Notes: generated from the sequence alone by a model not told the origin. A stretch of DNA of 64,000 nt from Saccostrea echinata (GCF_033153115.1 NW_026889772.1:9858001-9922000); one strand, 5' to 3'; shown: positions 9,903 through 38,763, counted from the stretch's first letter. A program made the numbers and translations.

Positions 9903-11422
9903 GAAGATCTAGTACATGTGTGCTGTGAGAAGAAGATCTAGCATTTGTGTGCTGTGAGAAGATCTAGTATATGTATGCTGTGAGAAGATCTAGTACGAGT
10001 GTGCTGTGAGAAGATCTAGAACATGTTCTGTGAAAAGAATATCTAGTACATGTATGCTGTGAGGTGATCTAGTACATGTATGCTGTGAGAAGGAGAAGAT
10101 CTAGTACATGTATGCTGTGAGATGGAGAGGATTTAGTACATGTATGTTGTGAGGAGAGGATTAAGTACATGTATGCTGTGAGGAGAAGATTTAGTACATG
10201 TATTCTGTGAGAAGGAGGGGATTTAGTACACATAAGCTGTGAGGAGAGGATTTAGTACATGTATGCTGTGAGGAGAGGATTTAGTAAATGTGTGCTGTGA
10301 GAAGATCTATTATATGTATGCTGTGAGAAGATTTAGTACATGTATACTGTAAGGAGAGGATTTAGTACATGTAAACTGTGAGGAGAGGATTAAGTACATG
10401 TATACTGTAAGGAGAAGATTTAATACATGTAAACTGTGAGGAGAGGATTTAGTACATGTATACTGTGAGAAGAGGAGGATTTAGTACATGTATGTTGTGA
10501 GAAGGAGAGGATTTAGTACATGTATGCTGTGAGGAAGAGATTTAGTACATGTACACTGTGAGAAGGAGAAGATTTAGTACTATACTGTGAGAAGGAAAGG
10601 AGAGGATTTAGTACATGTAAGCTGTGAGAAGAGGATTTAGTACATTTATGCTGTGAGGAGAGGATTTAGTAAATGTGTGCTGTGTGAAGATCTATTTCAT
10701 GTATGCTGTGAGAATAAGATCTAGTACATGTGTGCTGTAAGAAGAAGATCTAGTACATGTGTGCTGTACCAAGATCTAGTACATATGTGTTGTGAGAAGA
10801 AGATCTAGTATATGTGTGCTGTGAGAAGAAAATATAGTACATGTGTGCTGTGAGGAGATCTTGTACATGTGTGTTGTGAGAAAAAAATCTAGTGCATGTG
10901 TTTTGTGAGAAGAAGATCTAGTACATATATGCTATGAGAAGAAGATCTAGAACATGTGTGCTGTGAAAAGATCTAGTATGCATATACTGTGAGGAGATCT
11001 AGAACATGTTTGCTGTGAGAGGATTTAGTACATGTATGCTGTGAGGCAAGGATTTAGTACATGTATGCTGTGAGGCAAGGATTTAGTACATGTATGCTGT
11101 GAGAGGATTTAGTACATGTATGCTGTGAGGCGAGGATTTAGTACATGTATGCTGTGAGGCGAGGATTTAGTATGTGTATACTGTGAGGAGATCTAGAACA
11201 TATTTGATGTGAGGAAATGATTTAGTACATGTACGCTGTGAGGAGAAGATTTAGTACATGTATGCTGTAAGAAGGAGAAGCTCTAGTACATGTATGCTGT
11301 GAGGAGGAGATTTAGTACATGTATGCTGTAAGAAGGAGAAGCTCTAGTACATGTATGCTGTGAGGAGGAGATTTAGTACATGTATGCTGTAAGAAGGAGA
11401 AGCTCTAGTATATGTATGCTGT
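9903..11422. repeat. Minisatellite, ~28-33 bp unit (GA)AGATYTAGTACATGTATGCTGTGAG, roughly 50 copies
   Basis: Directly visible tandem array with a variable purine spacer, between the 3' ends of MDH1B and CDV3. Confidence 0.95.
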
Positions 11423-12963
11423 ACTTGATTTGAGGCATCTGTAGTACTCTAAGATCAATTGTAATGTCTTAATACTAACATAAAAAATAAGGTACATAAA
11501 TAAAATTGGAAAATATTCCTTCAATCTTATTATCCTGTAGCAGGTCTGGTGAATGGATGCCTATACTTCGTGTTGTGATTTATTTTAGTTTGTTCCTACT
11601 TTCTTAATATCTTGAATATATTTATAATTTGGAATGAAATATGAACATAAGTAGGTACATATGTATAACAATAATACATGTATCAAACACACCAAGTTTA
11701 TAAATCCTAAATGTAAATTCCCCCAACCTAACTAGCCTAATCTAAGTAATTTATTCAATTAATTAATATTTATTATATTATTAGAATTTTTGGAAAAAAA
11801 AATTACATGTAACCTGCATGGTTTTTACTTACATAACCCATTAAATGAAGACAACATAAAACCTTACTTTCATTACAATTTCCTTAAAGTCTTGATTGAA
11901 CATTTTTCATAGTAAAAATATGAATAGGCTATGAAAAAAGTATTAGTTTGACTGGTATTCGTAATTGTAGCCACCCTGCAATTATTAAATCTTTCCTTTT
12001 TTTTGGAAAAAATAAAATGGATGGTTAAGGTGAATTTACTATGGGCAAAAATAATAATGACTTGCATCTGAAGTGAACCAGTTTATTGAAAGAAACAAGT
12101 TTTAAATCATAAACTCACCAAGACTATTACATGAATAATTCCCTTAGGCTAATAAATTTATAAGATATATTTATTTTATGACACTTCAATTAACAAAAAT
12201 ATGAGGAGAAATATATGGCATAAAATATTGCATGCCCAGTTATTAAAATATCAGTATTTAAAAAAAAAAATCCATTTAAAGTCCAACATACAGTCTTTTG
12301 ATGTGTAATGTTGACAGATATAAGAGTATCAAATTGAAATATTTGTAATGTTAAATTTTTTTTTCTGTTGACACAAAATGGACAGTAAGCCTTGCCAGTG
12401 GTGACTTGTGAGCCACTGACATCCAACATGTCTACCTAAAGACACAATGAATAACAATGTAGTGTAACAAAAGTGTTTTATATTTATCACACATTACCTT
12501 CACACATGGGGCTGCGAATACATAGTGGGATGGATTCATTTTGTAGCGTTCAATTACTCTGCAACATATAATCAGAAATTCTAGTATATGCTTATTAATT
12601 CTGATTAGCTGTTGACATAAAACACTCGCAGCAATACATAGTATAAAGAAGGCTTAGATGTTACAATATATGTATAAATGATGCTAAAAACATGACCAGT
12701 TGCACCATAGGTGTGATATAAACTACAAAAAATTCCAATTCAAAGACTATTTAAGGTCATACGCAACATATCTTACAACATACCTTACCCTTTAATAATT
12801 TTTAAAATTTTCTTGATATAAAATCATAGTACCATCTGATGTTCTTTGACAAAATCATCATACATTATCAGGGGTTTTAAATAGGTATCAAATGATGAAA
12901 TTCCTTGTGATATAAAAAAAAAAATTACCAAACATAAGTATGCAGTTTCAGTTGGGTATTTTC

Positions 12964-21864: not shown

Positions 21865-24800
21865 TTAATATCCCAATTTCAACAGCATAGGTGCCACAAG
21901 TGAGTGGGCTTTCTCTTTGCCCTGCAGAATTTCCACAATCTTCAGAGCAAATTCAAAAGTGGTTCCCGGCCCTCTACTGGTGATCAATTTGTCATCAGTC
22001 ACAACCCGGTCCTCGCTGTATTTGTAGCCACCTTTGGAGAGCAAAAAACACCAAAAAATTCAGTGAATAGTTTCATTAAATTATTAACATTCAAAGTTAT
22101 ATACATTAACACCCCCTCTCTCTCTCTCTCTCTCCCCCCCCCCCCCCCCCCCCCCGCCCCTTTTCCAAAAAAAAAAAAAAAAAAAAAAAGACTTCTCTCT
22201 CCTCAGTCAACTACTGGACCAGGGTAACCTTTCTAAGAAATAAATATGCAGAAAACTGAAACTTATTTACAGTAGCCACCAAGTTTTGCAAAAATTCAAC
22301 AATTTCAATAATGTTATAATGTATATGGAGGCACAAAGTCATCTAAGCTTAGTAAAAATGGTTGCCTTTCTGATGAAGAATGATTTCAAATTGAATAAGT
22401 TTTAATTTTCACTACAATTAGATTTACATATGTGAATCAATATGCCCTTCTGTTCTTGCAAAAAAGATTATTAAGGATTTTTCCCTCTATGCCAGTGAAA
22501 ATTTTGCTCACTTATAGTGGTCCACCCCAGCCCTGGGGGCCATAATTTGAAGAAGCTTGAATCTACACCAAATAAAGAAGCTTTCTAACACAAGATTTTT
22601 CTGGACACAACTAATAAACTTTTTCTTGCTGGAATGTTCTTGGGTCAAAGTCAATAATACCCTCAGGTGATATACAATATTTTTGAGAAGTATGAGCCTC
22701 TAATGTTCTCCAATTCAAGATATGGTCAGGACAAGAATTCAACATTTTTCTAAAGTGACATTGAGCTTAATCAAATGACATTGGGTCAAGGTCATGACAC
22801 ATTTTCCGGTCATAAGCAATCTTTCTATGAGGTTTGAACTTCCAATGTTTCTCTGTTAGTAAGTTGTAGAACCAGACACAAATTTTATACTTTCTCTGCC
22901 AGTGACCTTGAACTTGCCAGTAAGACCCTGCCTCAAGGTCAAGACACACCCTCAGGTCATAAACAATCTTTGTATGAGCTTCCATTAATTCTCTGGTGCA
23001 AAGTTATAGCCCAGACAGACTGCAAGGACAGTCAGACAGCTAGACAGATGGACGGACAGAGGTAGATGGACAAGGTGATTTCGAGATAGCCCCCCCCCCC
23101 CCCCCCCCCCCCCCCCGATGCAAAATCTTTCTTTTTCTTATCACATATTTAGCATAAATTATCCTCGTGCATAAATTCCTCATTTACAGTACACAGTTTA
23201 AAATAATATATAAGCAATTATATGTCTACCTTCCTCCATTTTTCCTTTGACTGATGGATGTGATGTTACTTTGGATCCTGGCTTTATTTTATGACTAACC
23301 AAAGCTATTGGTGCTGAAATATATTAAAATAAAAATTCACATTCAAGAGATACACTGAGTTAGAGTACTTGCATAAAATGTTTAAGTAATTCCAAGTACT
23401 TTTAAATAATTCACTACATTTTGCAAGTTAATAGCACTGATTTTTTTTCCTGAGATATAATTTTTTAAATTGTAACCTCCACACTGTAAGTAACTACACT
23501 CCCATATTTTTGTGTCTACAGGGATCAATATTAACAGTTGTCCAATTGCCTCAGGCAAGTAAATATTTCTCAAGAAACATATAATCTTTATCTTACAATA
23601 ATTTGTGAATGAAATAAATAATCAATTATTTATTTTTCCAGATCATCTCTTAGCAGCATTCTAAATAAATTGTACAGTTGATAATATGGTTTAATTGCTA
23701 TCCGTTTACTTTTATAATTATAGCCTAGTTTAATAAAAAGTTTGAAAAATTAAAAAATTTAAAAACTCCGTCTGATGACTTACATTCTTATTATGAAATC
23801 AGATATTTATATAATATAGATATTTATATAATATAGATATTTATATAATATAGATATTTATATAATATAGTTTATTTGCCTCCTTACAGAATATACATAA
23901 CACCAGTTATACTCAGCTTAGTATGACATATCCTGATCATGATAAGTATATTTGTAATAGCTGTCAAACTTCAGCATGGCTTTGCTGTCACCTCAAAGTA
24001 TGTAGGGGAGAAACCAAAATTAAAAGGTCCATATTGAAAATTGAAAAAAACTAGAAATATGTCCATAGGACATGAATGCCCCGCCGAGGGTATATTAGTA
24101 ATGCAACATTTTAACACAAATTGAGAAAAGTGAGGTCAAGGTCAAAGGAAAGGTAAAGGTCAAAAAACATTGATGCAGTTGAATAGCTCTCATCGGTATG
24201 TATCAGCATATGAAGTTTGACACTAATTTAAGAAAAGTGAGGTCAAGGTCAGAGGAAAGGTCAAGGTCAAAAAATGTTGATGCAGTTAAAAAGGTTACAT
24301 CAGTATGTATAAGCATATGAAGTTTGATGAAAATATTATGAATGGTTTCTTTAAAAATGAGCTAAACACTAATTTAAGAAAAGTGAGGTCAAGGTCAAAG
24401 AAAAGGTCAAGGTCAAAATATATTGATGCAGTTGAATAGCTCTTATTGGTATGTATCAGCATATGAAGTTTGACACTAATTTAAGAAAAGTGAGGTCAAG
24501 GTCAGAGGAAAGGTCAAGGTCAAAAAATGTTGATGCAGTTGAAAAGGTTACATCAGTATGTATCAACATATGAAGTTTGATTACACTATCTTGAATGTAT
24601 GTATCAGGATATGAAGTTTGTTAAAAATATCTTGAATGGTTTCATTAAAACTGAGCTTAACACTAATTTAAGGAAAGTGAGGTCAAGGTCAAAAGAAAGG
24701 TCAAGGTCAAAAAAATGTTGATGCAATTGAAAAGCATACATCAGTATGTATCAACATATGAAGTTTGATTACACTATCTTGAATGGTATCTTTAAAACTG

Positions 24801-26970
24801 AGCTAAACACCAATTTAAGAAAAGTGAGGTCAAGGTCAAAAGTAAGGTCAAGGTCAAAAAATGTTGATGCAGTTGAATAGCTTACATCAGTATGTATCAA
24901 CATATGAAGTTTGATTACACTTTCTTGAATGGTATCTTTAAAACTGAGCTAAACACTAATTTAAGAAAAGTGAGGTCAAGGTCAAAAGAAAGGTCAAGGT
25001 CAAAAAATGTTGATGCAGTTGAATAGCTTACATCAGTAGGTATCAACATATGAAGTTTCATTACACTATCTTGAATGGTATCTTTAAAACTGAGCTAAAC
25101 ACTAATTTAAGAAAAGTGAGGTCAAGGTCAAAGGAAAGGTCAAGGTCAAAAAATGTTGATGCAGTTGCATAGCCCTCATCAATATCTATCAGCATATGAA
25201 GTTTGATAAAAATATCTTGGATAGTTTCTTTGAAACTGAGCTTTGAACAGAGCTAAACGCAAAGTGTGACGGAAGGACAGACGGAAGGACAGAAGGACGG
25301 AAGACGGACATGACAAACACTATATGCCCCGGCCATATTCATGGCGGGGCATAAAAATGGAATTTTATTTAAAGGTTTACAGCTTTCGTGAACAAGGACA
25401 TTGGTATAGTGTGCCAAAAAATTTTTAATCTTTCACCAGCACATCAACATTTTGAACAGGCAAATCACATTACTGAATTAATATACAGTATTTAGTATTT
25501 GACAGTATGTTTATATTTTCTTCTCCTAAATATTTACATTAATAAATAATGTTTTCCTCTCTCTGAAGTTTGTGCAACCAAGCTTTTTATTTAAACAAAT
25601 CAAAGTTGAGTTCACTTGCCATTTGGGCAAGTGAATCTGAAAGTCAATGTTTACCTCTGGTAAAGACAATCTTGCAATACAGCATGTAAAGGTCTCTTAA
25701 ATAAGAAATGATTTACATATTCATATTCAACTCTGATTTAAGACCAGACTCAAGAACAAACTTAAGAGATCAACTGAGAAAAGAATCTTCTACCTGCACA
25801 AATTGCAGCAATTAACTTGTGGTTCTTCACTTGGGACTCTAGGAGACTTTTAACCTCAGATGACTGAAATAAAAAAAAAAGACAAAATAAATAATTTCCA
25901 GAATATTTTCCTTGTAATATTTCATAGGATACATGTAGCCCTACAGACTAAAAAAAAAAAAAAAAAAAAAAAGAGGATCATGGGCTACAGTGCTCACCTG
26001 AATCACCTTGGCCCTGCTGTTCTTCAGTACACTGACCTCACCCTATCCCTGGGGCCATGATTTCAACACTACCTGAAGATGTATGCATATTACTATGTCT
26101 AATCATACCATGTGTTCTTAACAAGATTTTTTCCTTGATTCTCTATTGTGGACCCATCCTACCCCTCAGAGATCAAAAACTTTAAACTACATGACTTGAC
26201 AATGTTTGCATATTTTATCACTAATCATGATGCTATTGTTCATGAAAAAAGACTTATCATATATTCCCATGTCAAACTTTGATACCCTATTGAGGCCCCA
26301 ACCTACCCCCAGTGATCATACTTTGAACAAGCTAGAATCTGCATAACCCCAATAAATATTACTAATCCTGGTCCTGCTATACTTGAAAAGAAGATTTTTA
26401 AACATACATTCCTATATATATTCCCATGTTAAAACTTTGATCCCATATAATGGCCCCATCTTACCAATGGGGGCCATGATTTGAAGAAACCTGAATCTGC
26501 GTTACCAAGGGATGCTTGAATATTAAAATTACTAATCATGGTCCTACTGTTCTATAGAGGAAGATTTAAAAACATTTTTCTTATATACATGTATTCTAAT
26601 GTAACACTTTGATCCCTATAAGTATTGTGAACCAATCCTATCCCCAGAGGCCATGATCTGAACAAATTGAATTTGCAGTTGCTGGGATGCTTGCATATTA
26701 GTCCATTAATCATGGTCTTTTTGTTCCTGAGAAGAAGATTTTAAAGAAAATTTCTATCTTCTCTATGTAAAACTTTGATCCCCAGGTTATGGCCCTACCT
26801 ACACCCAGAGAAAATTATTTGATCAAATATGAATCTACATTATGTCAGGAAACTTTCAAATAAGTTTCATCTTTTTTTGGCTCAGTGGTTCACCAGAAAA
26901 TTTTCTGACACCCTACATATTTTTTCCTTTCTTCATTATCTCCTCTTTTGAGAGGCCATGGCCCCTTTCT

Positions 26971-27010
<40 letters not shown>

Positions 27011-29348
27011 TTTGTTCTGGAGAAGAATATGAAATTGTGAAAAGTTTACAATGACATTGAACAACAATGACGACAATTTGATCAGAATAGCTCACTTGAG
27101 CCTTCAGCTCAATCCTATGAATCAAATCACTCACAGCTGCGAGATTCTTGGCTCCGTTTCCTCCCCCTGGCATGACAACTACATCATATGGAGCTGACTT
27201 CTGGGCCTCTGCCAGAGTGGTGTCCGGCACAATTTTCACATCTCTGCTGCAGTGTACCGGCTCACTTCCATGTAACCCTACCAACTTCACATCTATCTAC
27301 AATTTAAACAATATTAAGTTAGCTATTTCCACCTGCTTTTATGTAAAAGTGTACACAAATAATTACGATCACATCCCAGTGTTCGAAATAACCACACACC
27401 CGACCACCCAAAACCATTAATTTCACTGCAGACAACTGAATTTCCTTGTATCGATGCCCGGTTGGTCATGTTAAAATTTCAACTTTTTTCACGCTAGTGG
27501 ATCTTTGACAGGGTTGGCAACTTTTATCAGCAGTCAGTTCCGTATGTACATATCTAGCTAATTTTATGGTGAGTTTCAAACACTGCCACAACCCTGAGCC
27601 TAGGGCCCAAGATATGAATAAATATGAATCTAAACTATGTCTCTACCTTTATTTAGAATAATGCACTAAATGAAGATTTTGAAAACTTTTGTAAACAAAA
27701 ATTATTGAAAACAAGCTTTTCTTTCAACTTTGTCAGCAGAAATAAATTATTGAATAATATTATTTGACACTTTTCCAACAGTTAAACAAGCAACTGGAGA
27801 AAAAGAAATAGTTTTGCATAAGCCTTGAAGACTAACTAAGCAGTCACCGTAAGTGCTGTAAATAACTTTTTATTCACGAGAACTTAATTTTCACATAATT
27901 ACCCAAGACCACTGCTTGGAAAATTTAAATTTTTGGGTTTTTTTTGTACAAGTAAAAATTATACAGAACAAAAATTAAAATTCATAAAAATTATGTCTCC
28001 CTGATAAATACCAAATGAAAATCTCACAAAAATAAGGTAGGTGTTGGGAATCTTTGGTAATCTACAATTAACAAGAATATAAACTCTGCAAATGGAGTTT
28101 GAAAGAAGTAATGTTTTTAAAAAAAGATCTTTCTTTACCAGATATCTCGGGAAATGTTTGAGAATGATCAGAAACATCATATTTGGCAACTTTAGAAAGG
28201 GAACAAATTTAAATTTTGAATGTCTGTAATGATAGTGAAAACAAATGGTCATCTTCTATCACGGACAAACATAATACCAAGTTCAATTTCTCAAAGACCT
28301 CAATATCATTAGGGGTAATTTACTTCTTAGAGGGTACCAAAGTACCAAAATTGATGTCTGTAAAGCAAATAGTTCTCAAGAAACTGAACTAACAATGTCT
28401 TCCTGTCTAGAATAGTTTACCTCTGACCTTGTGACCTCAAAATCTACAGTGGTAAACTATTTCTTCAGTGGGTACCAGTGTGACAAGTTTGATGTCTGTC
28501 AAGCAAAGGGGTCTCAAGATATGGAGTGGTCATTAATTTGACTCTCGACCTTTGACCCTGTGACCTCCCAATCTATAGGGTCATCTACCTTTCAGGGAAA
28601 ACCAATGTACCAAGTTTGATGTCTGTCAAGCAAATAGTTCTCAAGATATTGAATGGACAAGATTTTCCCATGTCTAGAGTTGTTTCACCTTAATCTTTGA
28701 TCTTGTGACCTGAAAATCAAAAGGGGTCATCTTTTCTTCAGGGGGTAACAGTGTACCAAGTTTGATGTCTGTCAAACCAAGGGTTTCTCAAGATATTGAG
28801 CGGACAAGCTTTGGTCTACTGACATTCTGATTCACATACAGACCAACTGGCAGGCCCCTTTTTTGAAGGGGATATAAAAAGGTGTGACTTGCAGAAGAAA
28901 CTTAGCGATTCTGGAAAATATAGAACAAAAATATTTAAAGTTTACAAACAAACAGACTTTGGACAAAATATGATCAGAAAAGCTCATTCAAGCTTTCAAC
29001 TCAGGTGAGCTTTAATTTTTTTTTTTACTTGACACAAGCAAGGCAGTAAAGTTATTATTTTCACTTCAAATAATCTTTATCATATAAGGACTTTTTGAAG
29101 GATTTGTTTTCTAAACAATGTGCATTTTTAGTTTATATTATAACCACGGAAACTTGATGGTCGGCGTCAAACACTTTAACACGTGTAGGTCAAGATGAGA
29201 TGCAACACAGCCGGCATGAGAATCTACTTTCACTTTACATCAAAAAATGATATTCTAAACATACGCCTCCACGACGCAAGACATCAACTGAAATGACAGT
29301 TTCCATTTCTTCGGCACCTTCTGCCAGCAACACAGCAGCAGTCGGCAT
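21865..29348 (-). CDS. PARK7: Protein/nucleic acid deglycase DJ-1, 5 exons, 188 aa
   Basis: Exons 29348-29265, 27296-27135, 25863-25794, 23313-23230, 22031-21865. Translation [28 protein letters not shown]...YDVVVMPGG...IAAICAAP...VTSHP...[15 protein letters not shown]; the residues equivalent to human Glu18, Cys106 and His126 are present. Confidence 0.95.
22520..23116 (+). mobile_element. Degenerate HINE-like element in a PARK7 intron
   Basis: TGACCTTGA/AAGGTCA monomers, GACA/GACG microsatellite and a poly-C end; similar to 57440-58285. Boundaries approximate. Confidence 0.5.
23801..23870. repeat. 17-bp tandem repeat AGATATTTATATAATAT x4
   Basis: Directly visible. Confidence 0.9.
24051..25357 (+). 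mobile_element. HINE/Helentron-type non-autonomous element carrying a ~110-150 bp tandem array
   Basis: Subterminal inverted repeats ATGCCCCGCC (~24076) and GGCGGGGCAT (~25343), about nine monomers with GTGAGGTCAAGGTCAAAGGAAAGGTCAAGGTC, a GACGGAAG microsatellite, a 3' hairpin, and insertion in an A-run without a TSD. Confidence 0.8.
25970..27112 (+). mobile_element. HINE-like element with degenerate ~165 bp monomers
   Basis: 5' AAGAGG...GCTCACCTGA, repeated GGGGCCATGATTT/GAAGATTTT/AACTTTGATCCC blocks, 3' AGCTCACTTGAGCCTTCAGCTC. Confidence 0.65.
28250..29012 (+). mobile_element. Degenerate HINE-like repeat remnants (TGACCTTTGACC monomers) plus the 3' end of a second family
   Basis: Repeated TACCAAGTTTGATGTCTGTCAA...CTCAAGATATTGA units; hairpin ends at ~28855-28872 and ~28981-29011. 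Confidence 0.55.
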
Positions 29349-29723: not shown

Positions 29724-32700
29724 ATGGGGAAAATCAAAGGTATACAATCCAAAAAGAAGAAAATATATACATACAATAATTCGAGATATGACAAAAATAA
29801 TAAATTGACTTTGTTTTGCAGGCGGACCAGTTGTCGAAATGCAAGGAGATGAAATGACCCGGTAAGTCATGCCAAAGTGGGCGGAGCATCTGTCCACAGC
29901 TGTTTTTTGTCACTAAATCTTTTATTACTGTTATTTAGAGAGAAAAAATGTAATCAACATCGACATGTATATATAAATAATTTATTTTCATATGCTTTTT
30001 TGGACACGAAGGGGCATCTACATTTCTGAACGTATAAAAGGAATATCGAATGACATGTGGCATGTCGGAAATCATTGGCGGATCTAATATTAGATTATTC
30101 AGAATTTCTACACAGCTTAACTGATCAGTAAAAGAGGAAAAAAAAGTAAAAATAAAAATAAAATAAAATCACTTTAACATTTAAGGACAAAAATTTTAAC
30201 AGTTTCCTCTTGGTATTTTATAGCATGAAATGAACTTATGAATTCTTTTTCAAGACATTTCACTTGTTATTTATTCCCTGCTTTTAAAAAAATGTGAAAT
30301 TTTTTCCCATAATTTTGCAGGGTTATTTGGGATTTGATCAAACAAAAGCTGATCCTGCCTTTTGTTGAATTAGAGCTCCATTCATATGATCTTGGAATGG
30401 AAAATCGAGACGCTACAGATGACCAAGGTATAGAGTGATATAACAGCTGTTACCCAGTAGTTACATAATATTACCACAGGGTATACACAACTTAACAATG
30501 AAGGATTTTCCTCAGTAGGGGGTATATTGCTCAAAATAATACAGCATTAAAAACCAGAAGTGTCAATATTTCAACATTTCAGACTGTACATATATATAGA
30601 TATATTGCATCTAATTGAGTTTAAAATTTTGGCTAAAATAAATTTATTTACATGCTTTAAACCTGGTAATTCTGTGATAGAGCAAGATATTTTAAGGGAA
30701 TAATAATGATAGTAAGAAATATTTAATACTTGAATGAGGCAAAGTTTACCATTTGGAATTTGAATCAAGACTCCCAAAGTTCATCAAGATATTGGAGGAT
30801 TCATATTAAATGAGTTGACAATTTGAGAAAGTTGATAATTGAATTTTAATAAGGTCTGGACCTAAGATTCATTTTGAAATCTTTGGATTAATGACATATA
30901 ACAGTATTTGAGATACTAATTTATATAGTACTGGGACCCGTTTTACAAAAGAACTTACGACGAAGACCAAAATTTAATTCTGCTTAATATAACTTTTTAT
31001 TTACGTAATATTGAAAATGGTTTTAATCTTTTTAAAAGGAATGTAGTAAGATATCTTTATGCTAGCTATTTTAAAAAGAAACATTAATTTTTCAAAATTT
31101 TACAATCAACTCAAGTTTTTGGTCTTAGTCGTAAGTTAATTCTTTTGTAAAATGGGCACCTGGTTCCCTTATTTGTGTTGAAAATATCTGTACATTTTTT
31201 CAGTAACAATTGATGCTGCCAATGCTATTAAGAAGTACAATGTAGGAATTAAGTGTGCCACTATTACCCCAGATGAGAAAAGAGTGGAGGGTATGTACTG
31301 ATTTTAACATCATAGAGTGGAGGGTACCGTAGCTACCACATTTAACATTGTAGAATGGAAGGAAGGTACCACATATAACATGTACATTACAGAGTGAAGG
31401 TTGAGTACCACCTTTAGAGGGTACATGTAGGTACCATATTCTACATCATTTAGGGTGTGTACTACACTTTACATTATAAAGTGTATGGTAGGTACCGCAT
31501 TTCACATTATAGAGTGGAGGGTAGGTACCATACTTTATAGAGTGGAAGGTAGGTACCATACTTTATAGAGTGGAGGGTAGGTATCATACTTTATAGAGTG
31601 GAGGGTAGGTACCATATTTATACCCCACGCAGCAAGTTGCGTGAGGTATAATGTTTTTGACCTGTCTGTCAGTCAGTCAGTCCTGTTTTTTTGTCAGCGC
31701 AACTCCTCAAAAATCGCTGCACAGAATTTCAGAGAGTAGGTACCATACTTTATAGAGTGGAGGGTAGGTACCATACTTTATAGAGTGGAGGGTAGGTACC
31801 GTACTTTATAGAGTGGAGAGTAGGTACCATACATTATAGAGTGGAGGGTAGGTACCATACTTTATAGAGTGGAGGGTAGGTACCATACTTTATATAGTGG
31901 AGGGTAGGTACCATACATTATAGAGTGGAGGGTAGGTACCATACTTTATAGAGTGGAAGGTAGGTACCATACTTTGTAGAGTGAAGGGTAGGTACCATAC
32001 TTTATAGAATGGAGAGTAGGTACCATATTTTATAGAGTGAAGGGTAGGTACCATACTTTATAGAGTGAAGGGTAGGTACCATACTTTATAGAGTGGAGAG
32101 TAGGTACCATACTTTATAGAGTGGAGGGTAGGTACCATACTTTATAGAGTGGAGGGTAGGTACCATATTTTATAGAGTGGAGGGTAGGTACCATACTTTA
32201 TAGTGTGGAGGGTAGGTAACATACTTTATAGAGTGAAGGGTAGGTACCATACTTTATAGAGTGGAGGGTAGGTACCATACTTTATAGAGTGGAGGGTAGG
32301 TACCATATTTTATAGAGTGGAGGGTAGGTACCATACTTTATAGTGTGGAGGGTAGGTAACATACTTTATAGAGTGAAGGGTAGGTACCATACTTTATAGA
32401 GTGGAGGGTAGGTACCATACTTTATAGAGTAGAAGGTACCACATTTTACATTACAGAGTGGATTTAATTTATATTTCTGCACTAAAATAATTTAGTTTTA
32501 TATTTAAATCATTGATTTGATATTTTCAGAATTCAATTTGAAGAAGATGTGGAAGTCTCCCAATGGAACAATTAGAAATATTTTAGGAGGTACAGTTTTT
32601 CGCGAGGCCATCATCTGTAGCAACATTCCCCGTCTGGTACCTGGATGGACAAAAAGCATCATTATAGGCCGTCATGCTTATGGAGACCAGGTCAGAAACA

Positions 32701-35700
32701 TTATTGTATAGTTTATTAGAAAAGAAAATACAGTTTTGCACCCATTTGAAAAAAATAGATAATCCTGTAAAAGTTAAGAACAAGATTTGGGTGCTTGTTC
32801 AAGTTTATTTTGTTTAAATCCACCATATTTACGATGAATTCTATTTATAGTACCGTGCCACAGATTTTGTTGTACCTGGACCAGGTAAACTAGAGATCAA
32901 GTTCACACCAGCTAATGGTGGCCAGGAACAGAACTACAACGTGTTTGACTTTACAGAGTCAGGAGGTGTAGCTCTAGCCATGTACAACACAGACAAGGTA
33001 AGAACTAGGGCTGTAACGATACAGCTAAAGTGTATCATGGTATATCATGAAACATTGGGACTGTATCACGATATGTCACCTTTCTTAATTTTTTTTGTGT
33101 GTCACTGTTCTGAAATGAGAAATTTTCTATTATAATGTGAACAGATAAGAGTTGTAGATTATTTTTTCAGGTCATGTATACATTATGAAACATTTAATAA
33201 CCTCTAAACACCATTAAAAGCAGCATAGATTAGTTGAATATACAACATTATTTTCACTACAGTTTTATTTTCACTCTCATTAAAGCAGGCTAAAACAGTG
33301 AAAATAAGGTTGTAGATAAATAAATCGAATTTGACAGTGAATGTTCAGTAAAAGGATAGAAAATGCTGAATTCAGAAAATGAAAAAGAAAATACTAATCT
33401 ATTAAAATCATGTTTAGAATCAAAGCTGTATACATTATGTGGAAGTCAATTATTTGAAAAACCAATTGTAGCAAGATTATTCAATAGTCAAAGCATATGA
33501 GATTGAGGGCAGTTTTCAATTCTACAAAAAGCAGTATTTTCATGGACAGTTTAAATTTTAAACTGTAAACACTCTGTTCTTGTTGTGTTACAGAGTATAA
33601 GAGAATTTGCCCACAGTTCTTTCCAGTTTGCTCTACAAAAGGAATGGCCACTATATTTGAGGTAAATTATATTTCTCTTTCTGTAAATCACCTTTTATTT
33701 GCGAGATCTTTATTTTAATGTAATTACGCGAGACTGTGTGCTCGCAAAAAAATTTATTCTTGTCTATAGTATAATAGTAATCCTTATGATTATCTAGAGC
33801 AATAACCACATTTCGTGAATATTCTGTCTCGCTAATAAAGAGACGTTGACTATCTCTTGAAAATAAAGTGTCGCGAAAGTTTAGTGATCTACAGTAGCAA
33901 ATTGTAGTTAATAGTGTGTTAGTCTTGTAAGTCACACTTGAAGTTTACAAATCAGCAGACAAGAATTGAAAGATTTTGGTTTTGTACCAGTAAGCATTAT
34001 TGGATCTGTCAGTTGTACACAATATATCAAAGGTAATAATGTTGCATCTTTTTTTTTCCAGCACAAAGAATACCATTCTCAAGAAATATGATGGAAGATT
34101 CAAGGACATATTTCAAGAAATTTATGATCAGTGAGTATATTGAATGTATAAACATACTTTCAAGCATTCTCAGTCATTTACAGTAAACACATTGGCTTCA
34201 TAAATATGCATGTATTTAGAGATTACAAGAAGGCGTATGAGGAGAAAAAGATTTGGTACGAGCATCGACTTATTGATGACATGGTAGCATACGCCATGAA
34301 ATCAGAAGGAGGCTTTGTTTGGGCATGTAAGAATTACGATGGAGATGTACAGTCTGATTCTGTTGCTCAAGGTTTGTGCAGAAATTTTCTCAAATGTATA
34401 GCACAGCACCAAAGTTTATGAATGTGTAGTAGATGTGTCAATTGTCATAGTGTCACACACGTTTATGTGTAATTTTTAAATTTTTACTATTGTTTGTAGG
34501 ATTTGGATCCCTAGGAATGATGACTAGTGTATTGGTCTGTCCCGATGGTAAAACCATCGAAGCCGAGGCTGCTCACGGAACAGTAACCAGGCATTTCCGT
34601 CAACATCAGAAAGGAAACGAAACATCAACTAATTCCATAGGTAAAGATCCATTTATAGTAATTATGTATGGTTTCTCTGAAATAAACTGGGTGCTTAGAT
34701 TAATTACCTTACGTTTGAAATAAGAAAGTTGGCAAACATATTCCAAGATTTCTAGACTGAAATTTTGATACATATACAGTGTATATAAGGACTGTTGGCA
34801 CACATTGACATATCAACATAATGAAGTATATATAAAACCACATTGTACATGATTTCAACATTTTTTAAAATTTACTCACCTTAACTGTTAATAAAGTTTA
34901 TTATTGTTATTCTTTCAAACATGTAAATGATTATATTAAATTTATGTAAATGTCATATTTGTCAGCAGTTGAAAAGGAAATTGATATATGTATTGTAAAT
35001 TTGCTTTAAAGCAATCATTGTGTACGGTACTTCAGAATTAACCATTCTTTTTCTTTAATGTTTCCTTGTATTAAAAGAATCCTTGTAATATAAAAACACG
35101 TATACAAAACTAAGACATAAAATTACATGTATAAAACTTCCATTTAAGCTTCCATTTTTGCCTGGACCCGAGGACTTGCCCACAGAGCCAAACTAGACAA
35201 GAATGAAGCCCTGAGGAAGTTCTCCGATGACCTTGAGAGGGCATGTATAGAGACCATTGAATCAGGCATAATGACCAAAGATTTAGCCATCTGTATCAAA
35301 GGCATGAACAAGTGAGTAGGCAGTATTATCTGTGTCAAAGGCATGAACAAGTGAGTAACAGTATTATCTGTGTCAAAGGCATGAACAAGTGAGTAGGCAG
35401 TATTATCTGTGTCAAAGCATGAACAAGTGAGTAGGCAGTATTATCTGTGTCAAAGGCATGAATGAGTAGGAAGTATTGTCTGTATCAAAGGCATGAACAA
35501 GTGAGTAGGCAGTATTATCTGTGTCAAAGGCATGAACAAGTGAGTAACAGTATAATCTGTGTCAATCATGAACAAGTGAGTAGGCAGTATTATCTGTGTC
35601 TAAGCATGAACAAGTGAGTAGGCAGTATTATCTGTGTCAAACGCATGAATGAGTAGGAAGTATTGTCTGTATCAAAGGCATGAACAAGTGAGTAGGCAGT

Positions 35701-37087
35701 ATTATCTGTGTCAAAGGCATGAACAAGTGAGTAGGGAGTATTATCTTGTCAAAGGCATGAACAAGTGAGTAGGCAGTATTATCTGTGTCAAACACATGAA
35801 CAAGTGAGTAGGAAGTATTGTCTGTATCAAAGGCATGAACAAGTGAGTAGGCAGTATTGTCTCTGTCAAAGGCATGAACAAGTAAGAGACAGTATTATCT
35901 CTGTCAAAGGCATGAAAAAGCCAGTAGGAAGTATTATCTCTGTCAAAGGCATGAACAAGTGAGTAGGCAGTATTATCTGTGTCAAAGGCATTAACAAGTG
36001 AGAGACAGTATTATCTCTGTCAAAGGCATGAACAAGCCAGTAGGAAGTACTGTATGTGTACTTAAAAAAAGCGGGCTTCATATTTTAGCAGCTTTGGCAC
36101 AGACAGTATGATGCGCTAATTCATGAATACCGCTAAATAATCATTTACAAATACAATATACGGCACGGACTTGTGTAGCGCTAATTCATTATTACGCCAA
36201 CAACTGCATATCCATTGATTGCACTTAATTTTGAATACGCCAAATTATGTACACGTACAGTATTATCTGTGTCAAAGGCATGAACAAGTGAGTAGGCAGT
36301 ATTATCTGTGTCAAAGGCATGAACAAGTGAGTAGGCAGTATTATCTGTGTCAAAGGCATGAACAAGTGAGTAGGCAGTATTATCTGTGTCAAAGGCATGA
36401 ACAAGTGAGTAAGCAGTATTATCTGTGTCAAAGCATGAACAAGTAAGAGACAGTATTATCTCTGTCAAAGGCATGAAAAAGCCAGTAGGAAGTATTATCT
36501 CTCTCAAAGGCATGAACAAGTGAGTAGGCAGTATTATCCATGTCAAAGGCATGAACGAGTGAGTAGGCAGTATTATCTGTATCATGGGTATGAACAATTG
36601 AGTAGGGAGTATTATCTTGTCAAAGGCATGAACAAGTGAGTAGGCAGTATTATCTGTATCATGGGTATGAACAATTGAGTAGGCAGTATGATCTGTGTCA
36701 AGGCATGAACAAATGAGTTGGCAGTATAATTTGTAGAATACTTTTTCTACAGTAAGGGTGTGCATCTACAATTATAATAAAAAATGCGTAATAATATAAT
36801 ATAAAACTTTACTTTAAATACGGTATTTTATTTATTCGAGGAGAATTTACAAACTGTGAGTATATAAAAATGGAACAGTTCATTGCACCAAGTAAGAAAT
36901 ATGGAGAGAAATATTGTGTCCGTCATATTCAGCACATACATATACCATGAACATTCTTGTAATCAGTGGTTAGGAGGATAAGTATCTTTTTTTTTTTAAT
37001 TTTAGTGTCCAGAGATCAGATTACCTGAACACGTTTGAGTTCATTGACAAGATTGCTGAGCTGTTGACCCAGAAACAAGCCAGTTGA
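29724..37087 (+). CDS. IDH1: NADP-dependent isocitrate dehydrogenase, cytosolic type, 12 exons, 410 aa
   Basis: Exons 29724-29739, 29822-29861, 30321-30427, 31204-31290, 32530-32690, 32851-32997, 33594-33661, 34062-34130, 34220-34371, 34500-34640, 35149-35311, 37006-37087. Motifs [60 protein letters not shown]. Confidence 0.96.
30934..31159. mobile_element. PIF/Harbinger-like MITE
   Basis: Imperfect TIR GGACCCGTTTTACAAAAGAA...TTCTTTTGTAAAATGGGCAC with a 3-bp CTG TSD. Confidence 0.65.
31281..32460 (+). repeat. 28-bp minisatellite AGAGTGGAGG|GTAGGTACCATACTTTAT anchored on the IDH1 exon 4 donor
   Basis: About 35 copies; the first copy is the real exon end/donor AGAGTGGAGG|gtatgtac. A HINE-like fragment interrupts the array at ~31617-31730. 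Confidence 0.95.
33681..33894. mobile_element. Small MITE
   Basis: TIR CTGTAAATCAC...GTGATCTACAG followed by TA. Confidence 0.6.
35289..36730 (+). repeat. 39-bp minisatellite ATCTGTGTCAAAGGCATGAACAA|GTGAGTAGGCAGTATT anchored on the IDH1 exon 11 donor
   Basis: About 30 copies; the first copy is the last 23 nt of exon 11 plus its GTGAGT donor. Confidence 0.95.
36050..36260. mobile_element. MITE with TA TSD inserted in the 39-bp array
   Basis: TIR CTGTATGTGTAC...GTACACGTACAG. Neighbouring units give the empty site AGGAAGTATTATC, showing a TA duplication. Confidence 0.8.
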
Positions 37088-37114
37088 CTAGATAAGGACT
37101 CTAGCAAGCTGTGA
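37085..37114 (+). other. UGA-CUAG readthrough signal with in-frame PTS1 extension (X-LDKDSSKL*)
   Basis: TGA CTA GAT AAG GAC TCT AGC AAG CTG TGA, read directly from the IDH1 stop onward. Confidence 0.8.
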
Positions 37115-38307
37115 ACAAGGACATTTCAAGCTTAACTTGATCATAAAAAACATCTTCTCCTTCTTTCTCTTTGCAAAACATATCAGTGTTTGGTACATGT
37201 GTACAAGTTCATGTGTTTGAGTGATATCTAGAGTATTCAGATTTTTACCTGTGATTCTTCTATAATATCATTGATTTATTTACGTTATTGTTTTGAAACA
37301 CATGATTTTATATGATCTGTGTCTGTATTTGTTTTGTACATGATTGTACATTGTAATACATGTATGATATGTGTTTTACTAAATATCCTTTGATATCTCT
37401 TTTGAGTGATTTTGTAAGTAAAAAATAAGCTTACAGGGTATAGTTAAATTTATGTGATTTTATCTGTCATGTTTATTTTGTGTCCTATTTGTTTTAGTGC
37501 ATTTTTAAAGGTCTTAGAATTTTTAAAAATTATTTTAAACACAGCAATATGATTTAATCAGTACTAACTACTTACAGTAATGTATTTCTTTTATGACATA
37601 AATTTATAATAAATACTTTTAAGTACTATGTTTTGACTTTCTATGCATAAAAAATTTGCCACACATTTTTCCTGCCTCCCTAGAATGATAGTGGTATATA
37701 TTTTTTGTACAGTAATATTGTCTGTGTAGTCTAAAGCAATGTCAATCTCCAACCACAGCTAGAGAACATCCACCTTGCATTCATCAACTTTGCAAAGAAG
37801 AGAATGCTACCACAGTAGATTCATATTCATTGTCGGATTAAAAGGTCAAATGCTCCAGGTCTCCATTGATAAGTAGAGATCAGATCAATTTCATCAATCA
37901 ATTTTCCATATTATCTTAGATACAATTCCAATTTCAATCTACAGGATCATGTTTCTTATTCAACATTGAAATCAATCCCCATGTTCTCAACCAAAAGGAT
38001 GGACTCTACAGTATTTTTCTTAGATGTTATGTTTCAAAAAATATTTAAAAACCTTCATCGGGTACTTTCTCAAATTTATTTGAAATAGCAGTTTGTGCTG
38101 GATTTTTCTTTCATGGCTGAGGATAATTATGAAGTAGCTATAATTCCCCTTATTCCCCAAAGATACTTTGTGCCAAGTTTTGATGAGAATGGCTCTATTT
38201 ATATGATCAAGAAATTAAAAGTATTTAAGCTTAACTCAACTTGTAAAAGGAAGAGATTCATTCTTGTTTGCCATATTTCTCTCCACTAGTCTCAATTTTC
38301 AAGCCCC

Positions 38308-38517
38308 TATATACATGTAAGCCTACAACTTCTTCATGGATCAAAGTATTTCACTGTAGAGATCAAACCTGTGTGGACATGTCTAACACCGCCATTGTTA
38401 CTTGGTCTTGATATATACATGTAAGCCTACAACTTCTTCATGGATCAAAGTATTTCACTGTAGAGATCACATCCGAGTGGACATATCTAACACCGCCATT
38501 GTTACTTGGTCTTGATA
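38308..38517. repeat. ~105-bp direct tandem duplication
   Basis: ATATACATGTAAGCCTACAAC...GTTACTTGGTCTTGATA occurs twice, with few mismatches. Confidence 0.85.
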
Positions 38518-38763
38518 AAAATATAAAATGTATACAGATACACAACTACACCATGTCAGGAGAAAAAGTAACATCAATTTCACAGTTCAATGCATTATGA
38601 ACAGATGCAAATGCATGTAAAACAACACAAAATGTAAATACTAAAAGACGATGTAAGAAATCCAACATGCCAGCCATAAGTTCAAGGTGTGAAATTAGAT
38701 GTAATGAATGCAAAGGATATACATTGTATATACACTAAGTGCTGACATTGGATAAAGGAAAAC

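What the first reader, a model, noticed from the sequence alone, without database searches (positions are those of the whole stretch)
37085..37114. Hidden peroxisomal IDH1 isoform: leaky TGA-CTAG stop followed by an in-frame SKL
Seen: the IDH1 frame ends ...LTQKQAS-TGA with no PTS1. The stop context is TGA CTAG, and eight codons follow (LDKDSSKL) before a second TGA. Established: UGA-CUAG is the best-characterised metazoan readthrough context, C-terminal SKL is the canonical PTS1, human MDH1 and LDHB make peroxisomal isoforms this way, and vertebrate IDH1 instead ends in a constitutive AKL. A readthrough PTS1 has, as I recall, also been proposed for insect IDH. Inference: this gene makes a minor peroxisomal NADPH-supplying isoform that automated annotation would miss.
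Basis: partly seen in the sequence, partly recalled or inferred. Interest (0 to 1): 0.88.

Follow-up and report, generated by a model that had tools for sequence, protein, structure and literature searches.

The report
Leaky-stop peroxisomal isoform of oyster IDH1
An oyster gene for the cytosolic enzyme IDH1 ends at a stop codon in the leakiest known context, followed in frame by a short tail ending in the classic peroxisome address SKL, so it very probably also makes a minor peroxisomal form; this trick was already predicted for insect and sea-hare IDH in 2014.

Summary
Observation confirmed exactly. The last IDH1 exon ends ...KQAS, TGA (37085-37087), then CTAG. Eight open codons (LDKDSSKL) follow, then a second TGA (37112-37114).

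Chance is very unlikely. Of 8017 stop triplets in the window, this is the only TGA-CT followed by an extension ending in [SAC][KRH][LM].

The stop is real. The window's exons match the 410-aa annotated Saccostrea echinata IDH1 at 384 of 384 residues. All oyster IDH1 proteins retrieved end at this position.

About 90 mollusc IDH1 proteins lack a C-terminal PTS1. Deuterostome and placozoan orthologs carry one.

The same layout (TGA, a Leu CTN codon, a variable linker, PTS1, stop) recurs in a gastropod transcript, three arthropod-like contigs and two through-translated insect-like proteins. It is absent from about 70 other IDH loci, mostly at lower identity.

Stiebler et al. 2014 (Fig. S3B) already list it for Drosophila, Apis, Tribolium and the mollusc Aplysia. 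This is therefore a new member of a known kind, not a discovery.

Not shown: readthrough or import in oysters, and conservation among bivalves.

Side finding: the same genome's MDH1 ends TGA-C followed by PPARL-stop.

The scan holds no earlier record of this on other DNA.

The parts
29724..37087 (+). IDH1 (cytosolic NADP-isocitrate dehydrogenase) coding region in 12 exons: 29724-29739, 29822-29861, 30321-30427, 31204-31290, 32530-32690, 32851-32997, 33594-33661, 34062-34130, 34220-34371, 34500-34640, 35149-35311, 37006-37087 (last 3 nt are the stop)
   Evidence: tblastn of mollusc IDH1 proteins on the window, plus GT/AG boundaries read by eye. Exon lengths sum to 1233 nt, i.e. 410 codons plus the stop. 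Whole-codon exon translations match the S. echinata protein P0312 at 384/384 residues. The exons were never joined into one sequence.
37006..37084 (+). Last coding exon, (N)[26 protein letters not shown]; no PTS1 at its end
   Evidence: It aligns to human and mouse IDH1 residues 386-409.
37085..37087 (+). Annotated stop codon TGA, the proposed leaky stop. The -1 codon is AGT (Ser).
   Evidence: The stop falls at the same position in all oyster proteins retrieved, from independent genome and transcriptome assemblies. The last residue is Ser in nearly all of about 90 mollusc IDH1 proteins.
37088..37091 (+). CTAG tetranucleotide immediately 3' of the stop; completes the UGA-CUAG readthrough core
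   Evidence: Only 4 of 2739 TGAs in the window are followed by CTAG. Its role as a readthrough motif comes from Loughran 2014 and Stiebler 2014.
37088..37111 (+). In-frame readthrough extension of 8 codons, LDKDSSKL
   Evidence: There is no stop in frame.
37103..37111 (+). AGC AAG CTG = SKL, the canonical PTS1 tripeptide, at the very end of the extension
   Evidence: The last four residues, SSKL, equal the constitutive C-terminus of Trichoplax IDH1 (P0364) and the C. elegans pyp-1 extension in Stiebler Table S2.
37112..37114 (+). Second in-frame stop TGA, which places SKL at the C-terminus
37608..37613 (+). First AATAAA downstream, a candidate poly(A) signal. The extension would lie well inside the 3' UTR.
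   Evidence: pattern match only; not verified with RNA data.

Best explanation
The window carries the single IDH1-type gene of a rock oyster. It is identical at 384/384 checked residues to the annotated Saccostrea echinata protein.

Most ribosomes should terminate at UGA 37085-37087 and make the 410-residue cytosolic enzyme. That UGA sits in the weakest known termination context, UGA-CUAG. A small fraction of ribosomes, probably in the low percent range, should therefore decode it with a near-cognate tRNA. In other eukaryotes the inserted residue is Trp, Arg or Cys. Those ribosomes add LDKDSSKL and stop at the next UGA.

The resulting 419-residue isoform ends in SKL, the canonical type-1 peroxisomal targeting signal. 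PEX5 should recognise it and import it into peroxisomes. [quoted passage not shown] That is the role of yeast Idp3 and of PTS1-bearing vertebrate IDH1.

Shown here: the sequence anatomy, its improbability by chance, the reality and conservation of the stop in oysters, the absence of any other PTS1-bearing IDH1 in the genome, and recurrence of the same layout in other protostomes.

Inferred: that readthrough happens in oysters, its rate, the import, and the physiological role.
For: 1. Anatomy: TGA-CTAG, then 8 open codons ending in SKL, then TGA.

2. Chance: this is the only TGA-CT plus PTS1-ending extension among 8017 stop triplets in 64 kb. The joint expectation is about 3e-5.

3. The stop is genuine. 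All oyster IDH1 proteins retrieved, from NCBI genomes and Logan transcript contigs (Saccostrea, Magallana, Crassostrea, Ostrea), end at ...KQ[AST]S. The window equals P0312 at 384/384 residues.

4. About 90 mollusc IDH1 proteins from bivalves, gastropods, a chiton and cephalopods lack a C-terminal PTS1. Vertebrates (AKL, PKL), hemichordates (MSKL) and Trichoplax (ASSKL) have one.

5. Only two NADP-IDH genes are in the genome. The other is IDH2-like, ends ...QEKM, and has a 2-codon extension without PTS1. There is no alternative last exon in the window.

6. The same layout occurs elsewhere.
- Published table: Drosophila TGACTA..SHL, Apis ..SKY, Tribolium ..ARL, Aplysia TGACTA N16 SKL.
- Metagenome contig L003, a heterobranch gastropod about 90% identical to Aplysia: AGT TGA CTT, 16 codons ending SRL.
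- L004: TGA CTAG, extension LARL.
- L006 and L007, termite-like: TGA CTT, extension ending HSKL.
- About 70 other IDH loci in the same scan, mostly at lower identity, have no such extension.
- Two database proteins translated through the stop as W show ...SA-W-LNSRL (P0205) and ...MA-W-LAYPDESKSHL (P0441).
- The first extension codon is Leu (CTN where DNA was seen) in all of these, while the linkers differ.

7. Motif function: UGA-CU(A)(G) is sufficient for readthrough in fungi and human cells and drives peroxisomal MDH1 and LDHB.

8. The same genome's MDH1 has TGA-C followed by PPARL-stop.
Against: - There is no direct evidence of readthrough or import in any mollusc. I found no experimental validation for any animal IDH either; Stiebler 2014 gives a prediction only.
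- I could not obtain the post-stop DNA of any other bivalve, so conservation of frame and PTS1 within oysters is untested (look-up of encoding contigs closed).
- No RNA reads could be laid.
- One lophotrochozoan-like contig (L005, about 80% identical) ends in TAA with no PTS1 in the extension, so the arrangement is not universal.
- There is no stimulatory RNA structure downstream (z = +0.86), so the rate may be only about 1-3%.
- The two Asp residues at -5 and -7 may weaken the PTS1 somewhat. A PTS1 predictor was not available.
Confidence: 0.75

Rival explanations
1. Coincidence or neutral leak. The TGA-CTAG context and the SKL nine codons later arose by chance in an AT-rich 3' UTR. Any readthrough product is too rare to matter and is not under selection.
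For: The extension is only 8 codons, and one genome cannot show selection. Genome-wide, on the order of one TGA-CTA plus PTS1 coincidence is my own extrapolation from the per-stop frequency, assuming a few tens of thousands of genes. L005 shows that some lophotrochozoans lack it.
Against: The coincidence would have to fall on the one enzyme whose orthologs are peroxisomal through a PTS1. It would also have to repeat independently in Aplysia, L003, L004, L006/L007, Drosophila, Apis, Tribolium, P0205 and P0441, always with Leu (CTN) first and a PTS1 last. About 70 other loci in the same scan show none.
Confidence: 0.12
2. Readthrough occurs, but the extension serves another purpose such as turnover or regulation, or the SKL is not an efficient PTS1 in this context. 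No meaningful peroxisomal pool would then form.
For: The acidic residues at -5 and -7 are not ideal for PEX5 binding. No localisation data exist for any protostome IDH extension.
Against: SKL is the strongest PTS1 tripeptide. Extensions with similar acidic linkers, such as LDHB DLKDLLVSSRL, score as targeted and work. The only feature shared by the extensions across lineages is the terminal PTS1.
Confidence: 0.06
3. Decaying relic. An ancestral constitutive PTS1 tail was cut off by a nonsense mutation, and what is seen is its not-yet-eroded remnant.
For: Removing the six codons from the stop through LDKDS from TQKQAS-*-LDKDSSKL leaves TQKQAS-SKL. That closely resembles the Trichoplax constitutive tail SQKLAS-SKL.
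Against: The stop is shared by all Ostreidae sampled, and no mollusc protein has a PTS1, so the event would be ancient. An unselected 24-nt stretch would not keep both an open frame and SKL, nor the specific CTAG context. Other lineages have different linkers but still end in a PTS1.
Confidence: 0.04
4. Artefact or another recoding route: an assembly error at the TGA, selenocysteine insertion, or a splice or poly(A) variant that produces the SKL tail.
For: None found.
Against: The stop is confirmed by independent assemblies and transcript-derived proteins in several oyster species. No SECIS or any other Rfam family was found in 36900-39000. The 3' end is single copy in the genome. The 9 nt from the GT at 37083 to the AG at 37091 are too short for an intron. 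No second last exon exists in the window.
Confidence: 0.03

Closest known systems
Predicted readthrough PTS1 of NADP-isocitrate dehydrogenase in Drosophila, Apis, Tribolium and Aplysia (Stiebler et al. 2014, PLoS Genet, Fig. S3 and Table S2; PMC4207609)
   Same: Same enzyme, same stop (TGA), same CTA after it, and a short extension ending in a PTS1. Aplysia, also a mollusc, has N16-SKL.
   Different: This is a bivalve. The extension is much shorter (N5-SKL, 8 codons) and unrelated in sequence. The full CTAG core is present. The published cases are predictions without experiments, like this one.
Human MDH1x and LDHBx (functional translational readthrough at UGA-CUAG giving peroxisomal isoforms; Stiebler 2014, and Loughran 2014, PMC4132726, read here; Schueren 2014 and Hofhuis 2016 cited from memory)
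   Same: The same mechanism and motif, the same outcome of dual cytosol/peroxisome localisation of a redox-shuttle dehydrogenase, and a short hydrophilic linker followed by a PTS1.
   Different: A different enzyme (an NADPH shuttle rather than an NADH shuttle). The human cases are validated experimentally; this one is not.
Yeast pre-duplication IDP2 with a cryptic PTS1 in the 3' UTR (Yanagida et al. 2015, PMC4526572)
   Same: The same enzyme family, and a hidden PTS1 just behind the stop that yields a minor peroxisomal pool.
   Different: In yeast the signal is in the +1 frame and is reached by frameshifting. Here it is in frame and reached by stop-codon readthrough.
Vertebrate, hemichordate and placozoan IDH1 with a constitutive C-terminal PTS1 (AKL, PKL, MSKL, ASSKL)
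   Same: Orthologous enzyme with the same targeting signal class at the C-terminus. The readthrough form would be only about 5 residues longer than human IDH1.
   Different: There the signal is on every molecule. Here a stop codon gates it, so only a small fraction would carry it.

Membership tests
Functional translational readthrough producing a PTS1 (UGA-CU(A)(G) class) | The stop codon is UGA | tested here: met
   TGA at 37085-37087.
Functional translational readthrough producing a PTS1 (UGA-CU(A)(G) class) | CUA(G) lies immediately 3' of the stop | tested here: met
   CTAG at 37088-37091. This follows only 0.15% of TGAs in the window.
Functional translational readthrough producing a PTS1 (UGA-CU(A)(G) class) | An open in-frame extension ends in a PTS1 tripeptide directly before the next stop | tested here: met
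   LDKDSSKL followed by TGA.
Functional translational readthrough producing a PTS1 (UGA-CU(A)(G) class) | Stop, context, frame and PTS1 are conserved in orthologs | tested here: inconclusive
   Met at long range: Aplysia and insects; L003, L004, L006, L007; P0205 and P0441. The stop position is conserved in all oysters at protein level. Post-stop DNA of other bivalves could not be fetched. L005 lacks the feature.
Functional translational readthrough producing a PTS1 (UGA-CU(A)(G) class) | Measurable readthrough (reporter, Ribo-seq or peptide) | not testable with these tools
Functional translational readthrough producing a PTS1 (UGA-CU(A)(G) class) | Peroxisomal localisation depends on the extension | not testable with these tools
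   This needs an experiment.
Cytosolic NADP-isocitrate dehydrogenase (IDH1) | Sequence orthology to IDH1 along the whole protein | tested here: met
   Exons match human IDH1 and mollusc IDH1 proteins. The match to S. echinata IDH1 is 384/384 residues. The second NADP-IDH locus in the genome is IDH2-like.
PTS1 (PEX5-dependent C-terminal targeting signal) | C-terminal tripeptide [SAC][KRH][LM] | tested here: met
   SKL.
PTS1 (PEX5-dependent C-terminal targeting signal) | Favourable upstream 9 residues (PTS1-predictor score) | not tested
   No PTS1 predictor was available. The last four residues, SSKL, equal those of extensions and tails that score as targeted and of Trichoplax IDH1.
Selenoprotein (UGA = Sec) | SECIS element in the 3' UTR | tested here: not met
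   No Rfam match at E <= 1 in 36900-39000.

The most novel reading that the evidence does not exclude
The leaky-stop PTS1 on IDH1 is an ancient protostome-wide replacement of the constitutive PTS1 kept by deuterostomes and placozoans. On this reading, the oyster's IDH1 extension, the MDH1 TGA-C..PPARL extension seen here, and perhaps the GPD1 alternative C-termini noted elsewhere in this genome together form a termination-efficiency-tuned set of peroxisomal NAD(P)H shuttle enzymes. That set could be regulated, for example by oxygen through ribosomal prolyl hydroxylation, as Stiebler et al. speculate. This would be relevant to hypoxia-tolerant intertidal bivalves. The near-invariant terminal Ser codon of mollusc IDH1 would then be part of the recoding signal, the -1 codon effect.
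Probability: 0.25. Interest if true: 0.7.

Novelty: new member of a known kind. Interest (0 to 1): 0.45.

Why it matters
If true, oysters have an unannotated 419-residue peroxisomal IDH1 isoform, and probably bivalves in general do too. It would be the only visible source of intraperoxisomal NADPH regeneration by IDH in a genome with a single IDH1 gene. That matters for modelling lipid and PUFA beta-oxidation and redox metabolism in animals rich in unsaturated fatty acids.

It also adds a bivalve, with the full UGA-CUAG core, to the list of lineages in which a redox-shuttle dehydrogenase is sent to peroxisomes by stop-codon readthrough. The protein-level survey sharpens the phylogenetic picture: no PTS1 on any of about 90 mollusc IDH1 proteins, and a PTS1 on deuterostome and placozoan ones.

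It is not a new principle.

Tried and rejected

No bivalve ortholog DNA could be read.

3. A profile query made of a gastropod IDH1 plus the window's exons as separate rows (A1, A2) failed. MAFFT misplaced the short rows, so I abandoned it. The exons were never joined into one sequence, and the read-through product was never sent to any tool. Pieces were searched apart and by reference.

4. The search of protein representatives with one exon returned mostly exon-sized fragments. It served only to obtain a query of usable length (P0090).

5. I looked for oyster or other mollusc proteins translated through the stop (TGA read as W) in the third homolog search and in ten clusters. None turned up; only two insect-like cases, P0205 and P0441.

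6. RNA structure downstream of the stop is not better than shuffles. I rejected it as a stimulator.

7. SECIS or any other Rfam element: none.

8. A second genomic copy or haplotig of the 3' end: none.

9. An alternative last exon with a constitutive PTS1: none in the window.

10. Inorganic pyrophosphatase (PF00719) as a further readthrough candidate in this genome gave no exon-level match, so it is uninformative.

11. A literature search for oyster-specific work on peroxisomal IDH found nothing relevant.

No contig that I took for human was met.

Full report
**The observation**

The + strand reads ...CAG AAA CAA GCC AGT TGA CTA GAT AAG GAC TCT AGC AAG CTG TGA. The first TGA is at 37085-37087 and CTAG at 37088-37091. 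Eight open codons (LDKDSSKL) follow at 37088-37111, and a second TGA sits at 37112-37114.

The frame is that of IDH1. The 26 residues before the stop (37007-37084) align to human and mouse IDH1 residues 386-409. An upstream exon aligns to residues 233-285.

**Gene model and organism**

I used tblastn of mollusc IDH1 proteins on the window and read the GT/AG boundaries by eye. This gives 12 coding exons from ATG 29724 to the stop at 37085-37087. Their lengths sum to 1233 nt, which is 410 codons plus the stop.

All comparisons were made exon by exon and by reference. The read-through product was never submitted anywhere.

The whole-codon exon translations match the annotated 410-aa IDH1 of Saccostrea echinata (P0312) at 384 of 384 residues. 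They match the two S. cucullata proteins at 378 and 377 of 384. The window therefore comes from that rock oyster or something extremely close.

The NCBI model stops at the TGA, so automated annotation does miss the extension.

The own genome is 923 Mb, and the window is contig C23:9858001-9922000. It has only one other NADP-IDH locus, on C64. That locus is IDH2-like, ends ...RETQEKM, and has a two-codon extension without any PTS1. The IDH1 3' end is single copy, and the window holds no alternative last exon.

**Is it more than chance?**

I treated every stop triplet in the window as a mock stop, on both strands and in any frame (8017 in all). Results:
- 0.36% have an extension ending in [SAC][KRH][LM].
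- 0.11% have an extension ending in SKL.
- 0.77% of the 2739 TGAs are followed by CTA.
- 0.15% of the TGAs are followed by CTAG.

The IDH1 stop is the only site in the window that combines TGA-CT with a PTS1-ending extension. The joint expectation is about 3e-5 per TGA stop. The hit also falls on an enzyme whose orthologs are known peroxisomal residents.

**Is the stop real?**

All oyster IDH1 proteins I retrieved end at the same position...KQAS...KQTS or ...KQSS. They come from NCBI genomes of Saccostrea, Magallana, Crassostrea and Ostrea, and from many independent Logan transcript contigs. An assembly error is excluded.

Other routes to the SKL tail are also excluded:
- No SECIS or other Rfam element lies in 36900-39000.
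- The 9 nt from the GT at 37083 to the AG at 37091 are too short for an intron.
- Downstream RNA structure is no better than shuffled sequence (z = +0.86). Any readthrough would rest on the short context alone.

**Comparative evidence**

*Protein level.* About 90 mollusc IDH1 proteins lack a C-terminal PTS1. They cover oysters, pearl oyster, mussels, scallops, venerids, Mya, Dreissena, a unionid, an ark clam, Solemya, many gastropods, a chiton and octopods. Vertebrates (AKL, PKL), hemichordates (MSKL) and Trichoplax (ASSKL) have one.

The mollusc tails vary, but the very last residue is Ser in nearly all of them. Given the strong and transferable effect of the -1 codon on readthrough reported in a 2026 deep-mutagenesis preprint, this may reflect constraint on the recoding site. 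That is inference.

One scan of metagenome contigs with the S. cucullata protein gave 80 IDH loci. Results:

| Locus | Likely source | Stop and context | Extension |
|---|---|---|---|
| L003 (identical to P0304) | heterobranch gastropod, about 90% to Aplysia | AGT TGA CTT | 16 codons ending SRL |
| L004 | arthropod-like | TGA CTAG | LARL |
| L006, L007 | closest to a cockroach IDH1, from termite-type samples | TGA CTT | LSV[Q/K]VGHSKL |
| L005 | lophotrochozoan-like, about 80% | TAA | no PTS1 |
| L008 | unclear | TAA | no PTS1 |
| L009 | unclear | TAA | none needed; constitutive SKL |

None of the roughly 70 remaining loci, mostly at lower identity to the query, has a PTS1-ending extension.

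*Through-translated database proteins.* Two entries were translated through the stop as W. They reveal ...KKKLSA-W-LNSRL (P0205, beetle-like) and ...KKAMA-W-LAYPDESKSHL (P0441, blowfly-like).

*Pattern.* In every one of these lineages the first extension codon encodes Leu, and it is CTN wherever DNA was seen. The last three residues are a PTS1. Linker length and sequence differ. This is what selection on a UGA-CU signal plus a terminal PTS1 would produce.

**Literature**

- Stiebler et al. 2014 (PMC4207609) showed that UGA-CU(A) is sufficient for readthrough in Ustilago and HeLa cells. They also showed that it targets human MDH1 and LDHB to peroxisomes.
- Their Fig. S3B and Table S2 already list NADP-IDH of Drosophila (TGACTA, N10 SHL), Apis (N9 SKY), Tribolium (N3 ARL) and the mollusc Aplysia californica (TGACTA, N16 SKL, score +9.7) as predicted readthrough-PTS1 cases.
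- Loughran et al. 2014 (PMC4132726) established UGA-CUAG. UGA-CUA alone gives 1.5%, MDH1 about 3.5%, and OPRL1 about 31%.
- Yanagida et al. 2015 (PMC4526572) found a +1-frame cryptic PTS1 behind yeast IDP2.
- I found no paper on bivalves.

**Mechanism, with status of each step**

- Termination at a UGA-CUAG stop is inefficient. This is established in fungi and mammals and inferred for oysters.
- A near-cognate tRNA inserts Trp, Arg or Cys. This is known from other systems and recalled from memory.
- Eight codons are added and translation stops at the second UGA. The sequence shows this directly.
- The SKL C-terminus binds PEX5 and the enzyme is imported. The signal class is established; import of this protein is inferred.
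[quoted passage not shown] This is established for yeast Idp3 and proposed for mammalian IDH1.
- The expected yield is in the low percent range, given the full CTAG core but no downstream structure.

**Side finding supporting the mechanism in this organism**

The genome's cytosolic MDH1 lies at G000:C2, with its last exon ending near 30070903 on the minus strand. It aligns to pig cytoplasmic MDH residues 262-327. It ends ...MAMAACQD TGA CCA CCC GCC AGA CTC TAA, which reads stop, PPARL, stop. ARL is a PTS1 and UGA-C is a weak stop.

Two of the two redox-shuttle dehydrogenases I examined carry a hidden PTS1, against a 0.36% background. The IDH2-like control does not.

Earlier first-stage notes on this genome mention alternative GPD1 C-termini with PTS1-like ends and an ACOT13 SKL micro-exon. 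I did not test those.

**Verdict**

It is a new bivalve member of a kind already predicted in print for insects and a gastropod, so it is not a novel mechanism.

Open points:
- conservation of the extension among bivalves;
- actual readthrough and import.

Noticed in passing
G000:C2:30070500-30071300 (locus L089), minus strand; stop at about C2:30070903: Cytosolic malate dehydrogenase (MDH1) of the same genome ends ...MAMAACQD TGA CCA CCC GCC AGA CTC TAA. This is a UGA-C stop followed in frame by PPARL and a stop, so there is a hidden PTS1 (ARL) five codons behind a weak stop. It resembles vertebrate MDH1x, but the extension is much shorter and there is no CUA.
   Followed up: partly
window 35289-36734: The last IDH1 intron begins with a 39-bp minisatellite of about 32 copies in two blocks. 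Its unit contains the last 23 nt of the penultimate coding exon plus the AA|GTGAGT donor. Reading past the first donor gives AAG TGA. Use of any downstream copy would therefore truncate the protein before the last exon and remove the readthrough tail. This agrees with first-stage notes s1-810154 and s1-810057.
   Followed up: partly
window about 21865-29348, minus strand: A DJ-1/PARK7-like gene lies head to head with IDH1. Its exons encode [29 protein letters not shown]... and ...[38 protein letters not shown]. Its first coding exon is about 400 bp from the IDH1 ATG at 29724, which suggests a shared bidirectional promoter.
   Followed up: no
mollusc IDH1 proteins P0270-P0512 (C-termini): The last residue before the stop is Ser in nearly all of about 90 mollusc IDH1 proteins, although the preceding 3-5 residues vary. 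The exceptions are Biomphalaria, Bulinus and the octopods. This may reflect constraint on the -1 codon of the recoding site.
   Followed up: partly
window 10001-12000: There is a strong local GC skew (+0.42) in an otherwise flat profile, probably a G-rich repeat.
   Followed up: no
L005 (metagenome contig Ga0157543_1052025): This is an IDH1 transcript about 80% identical to bivalve and gastropod IDH1. It ends in TAA with a 27-codon extension and no PTS1. At least one lophotrochozoan-like lineage therefore lacks the readthrough arrangement.
   Followed up: no
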